NCBI RefSeq assembly: GCF_035594765.1
Contig: NC_085847.1
Location: 5,890,001 to 5,954,000 of the forward strand
Source of the DNA: Anolis carolinensis
Lineage: Eukaryota
DNA length: 64,000 nucleotides
Direction: 5' to 3'
Part shown: piece by piece, positions 59,190 through 63,640 of the stretch
Position numbering within the stretch: position 1 is the first letter of the stretch
How the letters are laid out: every line of letters begins with the position of its first letter
Position numbers and translations under genes: made by a program
The notes under the pieces: model-generated
What the model was told of the DNA's origin: nothing
What the model saw: only the letters and a program-made list of their open reading frames with translations
Databases searched by the model: none

Positions 59190-62100
59190 GAAGTGGTCCT
59201 CTTCTTTGTGAGCATTGTCTGTGTCTCCTCTTTCTCCAGCATATTCTCTCTCATCTACTCCTCCTATGTGGGTTCTCTTCTTACCATCATTTGGTGAAAA
59301 GCTCCGTAAAATGGAGGTCTTTTTTTGTCTCAAGTAAGTGTGGCATTCTTCCTTGTGAGCTCTGCTATTGGCTCTCTCCTTTGTCCTGCCCATCTCTTGC
59401 TCCTCCCTGCCACCATTTTGTGAAATGGCAGCCGTTTGCTTTTATTCCTAAAGGGAGTGTGGCATTCTTCCTTGTTCTCCAAAGAAAATAACTATATAAC
59501 TTGACATTGTATTGTGAACTCTCTCTACCTGGATTTATTCCCCTGATATTGTAAAGACTCGACTTTTCTTTGATGATGAGGTTCATTGCAAACTTATGTT
59601 ATTCTGTTATGTGTTAGAGGACAGTGATTGTCTTGTGTATTCTGCATCATCTTTATGCAATTGCTTTTTGTTATGAAATGTGAAGTGTTCAAAACATGGA
59701 CCAGTGCTGTATGAGAAAAGAGTATGACCCATGCAGTACTTTGGAGCTCTCCCTTTCTTATCTATTTTATTTAATATATCTAAGTGGAACACAAATCATG
59801 CAAATACACATCCTGCAATGTTAACATGCTTTTCCGATTGCTTTGATTTTATTTGAATGGTGTGGAGGCAATGATTTGGTATGATCTTGTGTTACTGGTA
59901 CACATTTGAAAACCAAGGTTGGTATCTTCTGAAACAAATGGAGCTCCTACGGGGCTCAACAGAACGGGCTGAGCTCCCCCCTCCCTACCTTGGCTTTTCC
60001 GTCACACTTGCCATAAAGTTTGTGAGAATATCATCCGATAAGCTGTTGCATAAGAGCCTGAATAGAAGCATAAATGAAAGAAATACCAACATTGATTTTT
60101 CTGACCACAGTTTGGGAACACAGCCCTTGGGTTGTTTGCCGGCAGCACGTTGCAGAGTATTGAGCGTTCGGCACACAGGCCTATCTGATTGGAAGGGAAA
60201 GGGTGGGATTAGTTTCGGATGTGGAAATGTTCATAAACCCAAGGCCGGACCCTTTTATTCTTTGAAAAGGGGGCGTGGTATTGTTCCGTGTGAATGCCAT
60301 CTATTGGCTGTCTTCACTCTGGCCTATTCTCTTTTGCTCCTCCCTCCTGGGTTCTCTTCCCCACTTCTGCCTCCATTTTGTGGAAAATATCATGGTTTAT
60401 CTGCAGGAAAGTGGAACATAAAATGGTGGCCAGCGGCTTCCTATTGGTCCTGTCCCTCCTTGTCTTGCCCAATCACTCCCTTTGCCTCCTGTGTTCCCTC
60501 CCTCCCTCCCTTTTTTGAAAAGGTGCTTGTGTGCTTGTGCCGTATCTGCTAGATATAACCACGTGGTTCTCCTGCCCTCCCTCCCTCTTCCCTCTACCAG
60601 CATTTTCTGCAGTGGTTGTTTAACTGTATCTAAAGAAGACAGCAACATTAATAATCCTACATAATAATCTTCATACAGCTCATCTGCCTTGTACCGTCTT
60701 CTCTGCCTTTCTGTTCATTGTTTGCAAAACGTATGACGCAGTTTGATGAAACGTCTTTCGTGATGATGTCTAATCAGAACTTGAAATAGAACTTGAGCGG
60801 AAGAGTAAAAGGTTAAAGAAACACAATGAATTCTTGAACATACTTGTAATATGAAGGCTATGCATAACTTGGGAGCATATAGTTTGGGATTGGATTGGTT
60901 TGGTAAGAGAAAGTGGCTTATTTGCATGCCACACTATTCCTAGATTGAGCGATGTGGACAGAACAGCTGTGTGAGTGGAAATGAAGCTGCGTCTCTTGTT
61001 CTGCTTGACAGGGGGAGTGGCCTTCCTGCGTGTTTTTTCGTCCCTCCCCTCTTCAGCCGCCTCTCTCTCTCTCTCTCTCTCGGACTCCTCCCTCCACCAC
61101 CATTTTGTGAAATGATCCTCCTATCTCTTTTATAGGAAAGAGTTCCATGAAATGGCGGCTGGGTGGTTTTTTTTTCCAAAGGAGGAGTGGTGTCCTTTCT
61201 CTGAATCTCCCTCCCTCCTGGCAGCGTCCCTCCCTTCTGCGGCGGACTCATTCCCTGGCTCTCCCTCCTCCCTCCTGCGGCATTTGCCAAGGATCTTTTG
61301 CCGTAAGGGAAGAAGAAGCTGCAAAACATGGCTGAAGTTTTCTTCTTTGTCAGTCTGGTAGAGAGCTCCCTACCTACTTGATGATACCTTAAGACATGCC
61401 TATATTTGCAGTCTCTTTGGTGCTCACAGGATGATCATAATTCCAGAACAAGGAGTGCAGTTTTGAAGTGAGGAAAGACCATGGCTGAGGCAGCTGCCGA
61501 AAGAAGTAGATAAGCACTCTGAACCCTCCTGGCTGCTTTACAGTTTACTTCAAGCAGTATTTGCAAGTTTCACTCAGCAGTTTCATGGTGGATTCATTGC
61601 AGAGAAGGTGAAGAAATGAATGAAGTTGAAAAAAAGCCTTCAGTGTGTTGGAGCTACATAAGCCTCAGCTATCAAGTTGCTTTTTTTTCTTGAGGGGTCA
61701 AAGGGCAACTGCCTCACAATTTGAAAAGCAGAGGGCAACACTTAGTGGGAAATCTGTGCACGCAGCCCTCAAGGGAAGTGGCTGAGTTCCCCCCTCCCCA
61801 TTTCTTTGCCATTCACTGTTAAACAGCTTTCCTCACTGCCGTTGACCTTTCTGTGTTTGTGCCCTTAAAGCACTGCTTGCAGAGTTTAGGATGCAGCTTG
61901 AACAGCCTCTTCAGTGATTACGTCTGATCCATTGTTGAAAGGGAGCCTGGACAAAAGCTTATAGTATAAGTTAGTTGCAGGACAGAGGGCTGTGGACTGA
62001 AAAGTTGTGTGAAAGTAAAGGAAGTTCTTGTGCTTGAAGGGGGGAGTGGCATTCCTCCTTGCCGGCTCCATGTGTTTCTGGCCCCATGTGCTTTTACGCC

Positions 62101-63640
62101 CCTCCTCTCTCCTGCCTCCTCTCTCCGACTCCTCCTCCGCCACCATTTTGTGAAAAGGATCTGACTATCTTTTCTATAGGAAGGAGTTCCACGAAATGGT
62201 GGTCTGGTGCTTTCCTTCTCCTCCCCTCCCCGGAAGTGTCCTTTCTTGGTCTTTCTGCCTCTGGGCGTCACCTCCCACTCATCTTGCTGGAGGCGTGGTG
62301 TCCTTCATTGTTCTTCCTGCATCCCATGCTGCTGACTCACGCTCTCGCTCTCCCCCCCCCCCCCACCACCACTGTTTTATGCCAAGGCTCTTTTGCCTTA
62401 TGGGGAGGAAAAGTCTGCGGCATCCTTTTGTTGGAAGGAGACAGTGGTGATCTTTCTGTTGATAGCGGACTGGTCCCTACCTAGTCATGCTATTGTTACA
62501 ATATTTAAAAGCTGGTATTATTTTGTCTTTTCAGTGACGAAATGACACCTTTTCTCTGTGTCCTTGTATTCTCAGCCTGATAATTGTGCTGGAGTTGGGA
62601 CTACATTTTGAAAAAAGGAAGGTCAAGACAATTGGAAATAGAATTGTCTGTCATCACACTCCAGTGAACTGAATGAACACTCCCCAATTCACTACCATTT
62701 CTTTTCATAAAGTGCACCTTGGAAATATTCAACAATTTAGAGAAAACAATGAAAGGAACAAAGAAAGGTCAATCTTGTATGGACCAGCAATTGTCAACTT
62801 GTATTGTTTCGTCAGTGATTAAAAGAACCCTTCAGAATGTCTTTGCATTGGTGACCTGATGAGTGTGTCAGTGAGAATTGAAGTTTGAGAAGCAGCGGGA
62901 AACATTGATGGAAAGAAAACTGCTTATCTGACACTCAAGAGAGGTGCCTGAGCCACTCATTCCAATCTCTGTCTTTCAGGATTCCGAAAACAGATTTTCC
63001 CCTTTGGACCATCCTCTCTCCTTTAAGGGTCTGAAAGTACTATGGGCAAAATTTCAGATGTGCTTTGAAGAAGTTCTTGATGATTATGTCAGACTGCAAA
63101 AAGATGCCTAACCAGAAGTGAAAAAGGTGAAAACCATGTAATGTGGCATGTTTTTGAGTACACATGTAGGATAAACTACTCCCTGGGATTAGTGAACATA
63201 CAACTAGGAATGACTTCTGATCATGGAAAGTCGTTTCCTTGCAACCCTATTCCTGGATTGAGAGATGTGGATTCAAAAGCTGTGTGTGTGGGAATGAAGC
63301 TCCAGCTCTTGTTTTGCTTGAAGGGGGGAGTGGCTTTCTTCCTTGCCAGCTCCATGTGCTTTTTCGTCCCTCCCCTCTCCAGCCTCCTCTCTCTCGGATT
63401 CCTCCTTCCGCCACCATTTTGTGAAAGGACCCATCTATCTTTTCTCTAGGAAAGAGTTCCATGAAATGGCGGCTGAGTGCACTTTTTTCCAAAGGGGAGT
63501 GGCTTTCTCTGGAGCTCCCTCCCTTTTGACAATATCCCTCCCCTTTGCGGCAGACTCACTCCCTGGCTCACCCTCCTCTTTTTCTGCGGCAGTTACTTCC
63601 AAGGATCTTTGGCCTTATAGAAAAAATGCAGTCAAATAAC
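59190..63640 (+). repeat. Dispersed direct-repeat modules with a conserved stem-loop
   Basis: Clear copies at about 60950-61340, 61990-62430 and 63265-63640; more diverged copies at about 60220-60500 and 59190-59480. Confidence 0.9.

What the first reader, a model, noticed from the sequence alone, without database searches (positions are those of the whole stretch)
59190..63640. Array of conserved stem-loop modules in the lncRNA region divergent from MORC2
Seen: at least four long copies of one module, separated by unrelated spacers (hairpin-to-hairpin distances 727, 1043 and 1271 bp). The module reads TGTGGA...TGCTTGA-GGGGGAGTGGC, then a C/T tract, then CCACCATTTTGTGAAA, a ~35-nt inner region, TTCCAYGAAATGGYGG, a second C/T tract and CCAAGGMTCTTT; the 60220 copy is the most diverged. 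Stem arms: 60370-60382/60417-60429, 61097-61109/61146-61158, 62140-62152/62190-62202, 63411-63423/63460-63472. Collapsed versions lie at 59284-59317 and about 59409-59432. The 3' arm varies as CACGAAAT, CATGAAAT or CATAAAAT opposite an invariant ATTTTGTG. These changes keep pairing through G-U wobble in a + strand RNA but would be A-C mismatches on the - strand. The roughly 62-nt hairpin is pre-miRNA sized. No TIR, TSD or poly(A) tail was seen, so it does not look like an ordinary transposon. Inference: a multivalent structured-RNA scaffold (like the repeat domains of Xist, roX or NORAD), or a small-RNA precursor cluster, co-transcribed with the HUSH effector MORC2.
Basis: partly seen in the sequence, partly recalled or inferred. 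Interest (0 to 1): 0.9.

Follow-up and report, generated by a model that had tools for sequence, protein, structure and literature searches.

The report
Repeat array in anole X lncRNA
On the green anole X chromosome, a long non-coding RNA beside MORC2 carries many copies of an element (two facing YY1-type sites that can also pair as a short stem) that five other squamates have only once, and it lies in a region heavily methylated in female brown anoles, so it may be the repeat domain of the lizard X dosage-compensation RNA locus.

Summary
The modules are real, at the stated coordinates. The window is Anolis carolinensis, X-linked. Contigs from four probable RNA runs cover the modules unspliced (strand unknown). 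The array is not a TUG1 feature: it is absent from guinea-pig Tug1 and turtle. It is shared by A. sagrei and Sceloporus (pleurodonts, same ancient X). Gecko, Pogona, boa, Elgaria and Hemicordylus each carry exactly one copy about 1 kb from the MORC2 start. So one ancestral element, an inverted pair of YY1-consensus sites, was serially amplified in one lineage. The 10-bp core is almost invariant and its wobbles fit + strand RNA, but 16 copies show no covariation, and the outer pairs favour the other strand. It is not a pre-miRNA cluster, and no dispersed copies turned up. In A. sagrei the region upstream of MORC2 lies in the 300-kb female-hypermethylated X domain. Best reading: a YY1-site/repeat domain of the X dosage-compensation lncRNA locus (MAYEX region), analogous to Xist's YY1 cluster and repeats. 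Identity with MAYEX is unverified: that paper was not available. The scan noted a YY1 reading on this same stretch only, not on other DNA.

The parts
55963..56030 (-). MORC2 first coding exon (ATG at 56030); the gene runs down to about 39760
   Evidence: exons match A. carolinensis XP_008118005.2, P0450
55600..57000 (.). CpG-island bidirectional promoter region (CpG o/e 0.75 vs about 0.3 downstream)
56418..56427 (-). Perfect YY1 consensus next to the inferred lncRNA start
   Evidence: consensus as quoted in PMC4363909
56520..64000 (+). Long unspliced transcript, at least 7 kb, running past the window end. Strand is inferred from promoter geometry and motif polarity, not shown
56735..56860 (+). 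Promoter-like 5' unit: GC box, reverse CCAAT box, C/T tract, lone 3'-type arm
57059..57110 (+). Diverged ancestral-type module copy
57199..57250 (+). Ancestral-type module copy; hit by a profile built only from outgroup copies (E 3e-5)
57540..58700 (+). Unique non-coding block conserved in Sceloporus and detectably in Elgaria; its open frame is broken in both relatives
59284..59317 (+). Collapsed module copy
59409..59432 (+). Collapsed copy (arms fused; full length in A. sagrei)
60220..60520 (+). Module 1; arms 60370-60382 / 60417-60429; GC box and CCAAT box upstream
60921..61320 (+). Module 2; G-box, C/T tract, arms 61097-61109 / 61146-61158, degenerate second sub-unit
61985..62413 (+). Module 3; arms 62140-62152 / 62190-62202
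63234..63626 (+). Module 4; arms 63411-63423 / 63460-63472. Two further copies lie at about 64.5 and 65.7 kb in window numbering (L007)

Best explanation
The array is the repeat domain of an X-linked lncRNA locus of pleurodont lizards, the positional counterpart of TUG1 and probably part of the MAYEX dosage-compensation region. Shown: one squamate element (two facing YY1-consensus sites 25-55 nt apart, about 1 kb from the MORC2 ATG) is single in five non-pleurodonts and multiplied at least 8-11 times in three pleurodonts, inside a transcribed, unspliced unit. From the literature: in A. sagrei this region is methylated in females and hypomethylated in males. Inferred: the conserved arms work mainly as sequence-specific protein sites. 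YY1 binds the array on the open male X, sustains transcription and tethers the nascent RNA in cis, as at Xist's YY1 cluster. The RNA copies of the same repeats (short stem plus C-rich tracts) add multivalent protein binding that helps recruit H4K16 acetylation to the X.
For: One exact inverted pair in each of gecko, Pogona, boa, Elgaria and Hemicordylus, none in turtle or guinea pig. Homology to the Anolis and Sceloporus copies from an outgroup-only profile. YY1-consensus density 11-15 per 10 kb in pleurodonts vs 0-3.5 in the six outgroups counted, and 20.8 vs 1.4 within the window. In four outgroups the 3' GCGG extension is kept although the 5' arm does not fully pair with it, and those copies fold no better than shuffles. 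Core arms 0.99/0.89 identical across paralogues vs 0.55 in the loop, without covariation. The female-hypermethylated 300-kb X region holds 81% of all sex-differential CpGs and includes the MORC2 upstream region (PMC11784858). Anolis up-regulates the male X through H4K16ac (PMC5741051) and a lncRNA, MAYEX. Precedent at XIST (PMC4363909, PMC12101419). Some runs of the species hold the stretch and others hold none of it.
Against: No binding, strand or sex data were obtained. MAYEX coordinates could not be read, and MAYEX may lie elsewhere in the 300 kb. The amplification is one evolutionary event, so its match with X status is n=1. Most pleurodont arms have lost the CpG of the optimal YY1 site, while a TGTG/CATR extension not covered by the quoted YY1 consensus became nearly invariant. 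Orthologous arms between the two anoles are only slightly above background (0.93/0.90 vs 0.88; MORC2 introns 0.87). A promoter shared with MORC2 would be expected to fire in both sexes.
Confidence: 0.45

Rival explanations
1. The conserved unit works mainly as RNA structure: each copy presents a 10-bp helix with tandem G-U pairs plus C-rich single strands to RNA-binding proteins (a roX/Rsx-like scaffold). The YY1 match is an ancestral leftover.
For: Core wobbles fit the + strand, 24 vs 1. Local z -2.1 to -2.5 for three copies and -5.8 for one Sceloporus copy. All copies are co-oriented and covered by the unspliced contigs where tested. CCTCCC 4.2/kb on + vs 0.4/kb on -.
Against: No compensatory change in the core; covariation no better than shuffles. 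Outer pairs are mostly A-C. Whole modules fold no better than shuffles. The 60370 copy (z -0.86) folds differently when more flank is given. The G-U pattern is what transitions would also give.
Confidence: 0.25
2. Serial duplication of a promoter-proximal cassette (GC box, CCAAT, YY1 pair) that is nearly neutral or only tunes the MORC2/TUG1-like bidirectional promoter, with no role in X dosage.
For: Spacer homologies and a recent 200-bp tandem expansion in A. sagrei show ongoing duplication. Anole-to-anole identity is close to intron level. One copy lost its loop with both arms fused.
Against: Core arms stay nearly invariant across copies that differ by about 45% in the loop, and across Anolis and Sceloporus. 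The array sits in the main sex-methylated region of the X.
Confidence: 0.2
3. The modules are copies of a lineage-specific transposon, LTR or satellite.
For: Loose ends of RNA contigs show further copies whose location I could not fix.
Against: No copy outside the array in about 770 kb of ten squamate and other loci scanned or profiled. Single-copy orthologue at a fixed position in five outgroups. All copies co-oriented. No genome-wide search or repeat library was available.
Confidence: 0.04
4. Each loop holds a 3' splice acceptor (pyrimidine tract, YAG, GAAAG) whose use is gated by the hairpin.
For: Acceptor-like sequence in all four loops and a pyrimidine tract plus CAG in four ancestral copies.
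Against: No joint at these AGs in four runs (contigs drop rare forms). The AG is lost in several A. sagrei copies.
Confidence: 0.04
5. A cluster of microRNA precursors.
For: Hairpin span of about 62 nt.
Against: Only 10-13 conserved pairs at the base and an inner region that is variable and folds inconsistently. No Rfam match; best E 4.8.
Confidence: 0.02

Closest known systems
MAYEX/FEREX lncRNA locus of Anolis carolinensis (Tenorio et al. 2024, doi 10.1126/science.adp1932; known here only through citing papers)
   Same: Same species and chromosome; an old lncRNA on the X; here a gene body older than pleurodonts (Elgaria homology) in a male-hypomethylated domain.
   Different: Coordinates, length and sex bias could not be compared. 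From memory (unverified) MAYEX is about 3 kb, whereas contigs here exceed 7 kb, so this may be MAYEX, FEREX or a neighbour.
XIST repeat F / P2 YY1 cluster, and the Peg3 and Nespas YY1 clusters (PMC4363909, PMC2761279 abstract)
   Same: Clustered YY1-consensus sites in the 5' part of a lncRNA within a differentially methylated region; DNA and RNA roles hard to separate.
   Different: No homology. Sites come as facing pairs in 200-400 nt modules 0.7-1.3 kb apart; most lack the CpG; the Anolis system activates rather than silences.
Repeat domains of Xist (A, B), Rsx and roX
   Same: Multi-copy short stems and C-rich tracts in an X-linked lncRNA, arisen independently.
   Different: Dispersed long modules rather than tight tandem arrays (except in A. 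sagrei); no covariation or protein partner shown.
Mammalian TUG1
   Same: Divergent from MORC2 on a shared CpG-island promoter (PMC7487648).
   Different: No sequence similarity to guinea-pig Tug1, no modules there, no conserved ORF here, and unspliced in the contigs.

Membership tests
MAYEX | On the A. carolinensis X | tested here: met
   Species by MORC2 identity; MORC2 lies in the ancestral X part in A. sagrei. X linkage is by synteny and literature, not by coverage.
MAYEX | Male-specific expression | tested here: inconclusive
   Runs differ sharply in holding the stretch, but sample sex is coded
MAYEX | Overlap with the published coordinates or sequence | not testable with these tools
   Paper not held
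MAYEX | X-wide chromatin contacts and H4K16ac association | not testable with these tools
   No ChAR/CHART/ChIP data accessible
TUG1 | Divergent from MORC2 | tested here: met
TUG1 | Sequence homology (Rfam TUG1 models, mammalian Tug1) | tested here: not met
TUG1 | Conserved 5' ORF (TUG1-BOAT) | tested here: not met
   Candidate frame 58174-58464 has a stop in A. sagrei and a frameshift in Sceloporus
Clustered YY1 sites in a DMR | Several consensus sites above background | tested here: met
   (up to 1 mismatch)
Clustered YY1 sites in a DMR | Differential methylation | tested here: inconclusive
   Regional evidence from A. sagrei only; site-level data not held
Clustered YY1 sites in a DMR | YY1 occupancy | not testable with these tools
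   needs ChIP or EMSA
Conserved structured RNA | Covariation | tested here: not met
   power is low because the core is invariant
pre-miRNA | Long stem with a conserved 22-nt arm | tested here: not met
Transposable element | Dispersed copies, TIR/TSD/tail | tested here: inconclusive
   None in about 770 kb; genome-wide search not possible

The most novel reading that the evidence does not exclude
A third vertebrate X-regulating lncRNA locus gained its repeat domain by amplifying one ancestral promoter-proximal inverted YY1 pair at the TUG1 position. The same sequence serves as DNA tether and RNA stem for an activating (H4K16ac) system, converging on the Xist YY1 nucleation logic. YY1-like arrays noted elsewhere on this X could be its docking sites.
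Probability: 0.3. Interest if true: 0.9.

Novelty: new variant of a known kind. Interest (0 to 1): 0.7.

Why it matters
How lizard X up-regulation is targeted to one chromosome in one sex is open: MAYEX is known, but I found no account of its functional elements in the papers available. This gives a defined, dateable and deletable candidate element with a single-copy ancestor, so its origin and function can be tested directly. It also ties the TUG1 position to X regulation. If the transcript proves sex-neutral, it remains a clear case of how lncRNA repeat domains arise.

Tried and rejected
Rfam at gathering and E-value thresholds: nothing. TUG1/PINT/CHASERR motif kinship: no support in the papers searched or in guinea-pig Tug1. 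Coding potential: no Pfam hit and frames broken in relatives. Splice-acceptor idea: no joints. Long-range pairing of 5' CACAAAATGG-type sites with module arms is explained by their being lone arms of the same family; not pursued. A tree of the 74-nt cores is weakly resolved but pairs some orthologous copies. The MAYEX paper and any preprint were not held. No human contig was fetched. No N stretch was filled: L007 is identical to the window over 56031-64000 and does not cover window 759-905; the Sceloporus gap was left as it is.

Full report
Observation. The modules, arm coordinates, spacings and collapsed copies are as described. The 5' arm occurs 7 times against 0.06 expected by chance. Three long modules align over about 400 nt at about 75%. 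Each is a G-box, a C/T tract and the arm pair, followed by a second, degenerate sub-unit; A. sagrei has recently expanded a similar unit of about 200 bp in tandem. Spacers share old homologies, so the array grew by serial segmental duplication.

Context. MORC2 lies on the - strand with its ATG at 56030. Its exons match Anolis carolinensis XP_008118005.2, with a variable exon identical at 117/117. The NCBI locus CM069373.1 is identical to the window over 56031-64000 and adds two more modules just beyond it. The Anolis X corresponds almost entirely to chicken chromosome 15, and the male X is up-regulated with H4K16ac (PMC5741051) through the lncRNA MAYEX. In A. sagrei a single 300-kb X region holds 859 of 1060 sex-differential CpGs, all female-hypermethylated, and includes the upstream region of MORC2 (PMC11784858). 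The MAYEX paper itself was not held.

Transcription. Four runs guessed to be RNA give continuous contigs from about 56520 across the stretch laid (56300-62299), up to 7435 nt long, with no splice joint. The listed joints come from the repeats themselves. Three of the four assemblies total 22-444 Mb, well below a lizard genome (about 1.8 Gb, own knowledge), which fits RNA but does not prove it. Contigs give no strand or level. Loose ends show further module copies that I could not place. Other runs of the species hold none or almost none of the stretch, which fits sex- or tissue-restricted expression, but the metadata are coded.

Evolution. I fetched 10 kb upstream of MORC2 from ten species. 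Guinea-pig Tug1 and turtle show no module and no similarity. A. sagrei and Sceloporus carry the array; the Sceloporus count is a minimum because 3.2 kb is a gap. Gecko, Pogona, boa, Elgaria and Hemicordylus each have exactly one GCCATTTT-N25-55-AARATGGCGG element, 0.9-1.25 kb from the ATG. A profile built only from outgroup copies finds Anolis and Sceloporus copies (best E 3e-5). A unique block of the transcript is also detectable in Elgaria (E 4e-11). So the gene body and one element are old, and amplification happened after the split from Pogona and before Anolis and Sceloporus parted. This is a single event, so its coincidence with X status is suggestive only.

DNA or RNA. Across 16 copies the core arms are 0.99 and 0.89 identical, the loop 0.55. 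Core wobbles favour + strand RNA (24 G-U vs 1 A-C), the outer pairs favour the opposite (4 vs 25), and covariation does not exceed shuffles. The test has little power because the core hardly varies. Local folding z is about -2 for three copies, near 0 for whole modules, and not significant for the outgroup copies. Most arms match the YY1 consensus CCGCCATNTT (as quoted in PMC4363909) with at most one mismatch, about 14 times denser than in the rest of the window. The Hemicordylus copy is perfect on both strands. The ancestral element is therefore best read as an inverted YY1 pair, which is automatically a hairpin when transcribed. Against a pure DNA reading, the pleurodont copies lost CpGs and fixed an extension that keeps + strand pairing, and C-rich tracts are strand-biased.

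Mechanism (inferred). On the hypomethylated male X, YY1 occupies the array, supports transcription and holds the RNA at its locus; repeated stems and C-rich tracts in the RNA bind proteins multivalently and help bring acetylation to the X. I put this at 0.45, a mainly RNA-structural role at 0.25, neutral or local duplication at 0.2, and transposon, splice or miRNA readings at 0.1 together. It works like the XIST YY1 cluster and repeat domains but is not homologous to them. It is not TUG1 by sequence. My estimate is about 0.7 that it belongs to the MAYEX/FEREX locus and about 0.5 that it is MAYEX itself; both are judgements, not tests.

Verdict. A real feature; a new variant of a known kind; interest 0.7. 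The score would fall if the MAYEX paper already describes these repeats, and rise if male-specific expression and YY1 binding are shown.

Noticed in passing
window 39760-56030; L001-L010: MORC2 is compact in pleurodonts (16, 24, 31 kb) against 54-96 kb in other squamates and turtle.
   Followed up: no
window 54920-55660: The 31-bp-type tandem array in MORC2 intron 1 contains CCATTT cores and is shared with A. sagrei but not found in Sceloporus or outgroups.
   Followed up: partly
window 58662-58907: 18-nt inverted repeats 210 nt apart, MITE-like, also in A. sagrei.
   Followed up: no
window 57760-57804: Fragment of a high-copy repeat inside the transcript (many contigs, depth 638 in X3).
   Followed up: no
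window 56636: One base of a T run is missing in contigs of three runs: polymorphism or assembly slip.
   Followed up: no
L005 8208-8272 (-): A Sceloporus copy forms a long near-perfect hairpin, z -5.8.
   Followed up: partly
L004 1-700 (-): Recent tandem expansion of an about 200-bp module in A. sagrei; one copy is split by an insertion.
   Followed up: partly
L001 7400-9130: A turtle has a long GC-rich minisatellite right after the MORC2 bidirectional promoter.
   Followed up: no
window 34308-35579 (+) and about 29760-29958: A 7tm_1 receptor gene and the end of a KRAB zinc-finger gene lie 3' of MORC2.
   Followed up: no
same piece, 318 kb and 481 kb before the window: Other readers noted YY1-like tandem arrays in PISD and CUSTOS introns; possible docking sites on the X, but similar notes exist on other pieces.
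   Followed up: no
window 61116-61136, 62161-62180, 63430-63450, 60390-60409: Splice-acceptor-like sequence in every loop; no junction seen.
   Followed up: yes
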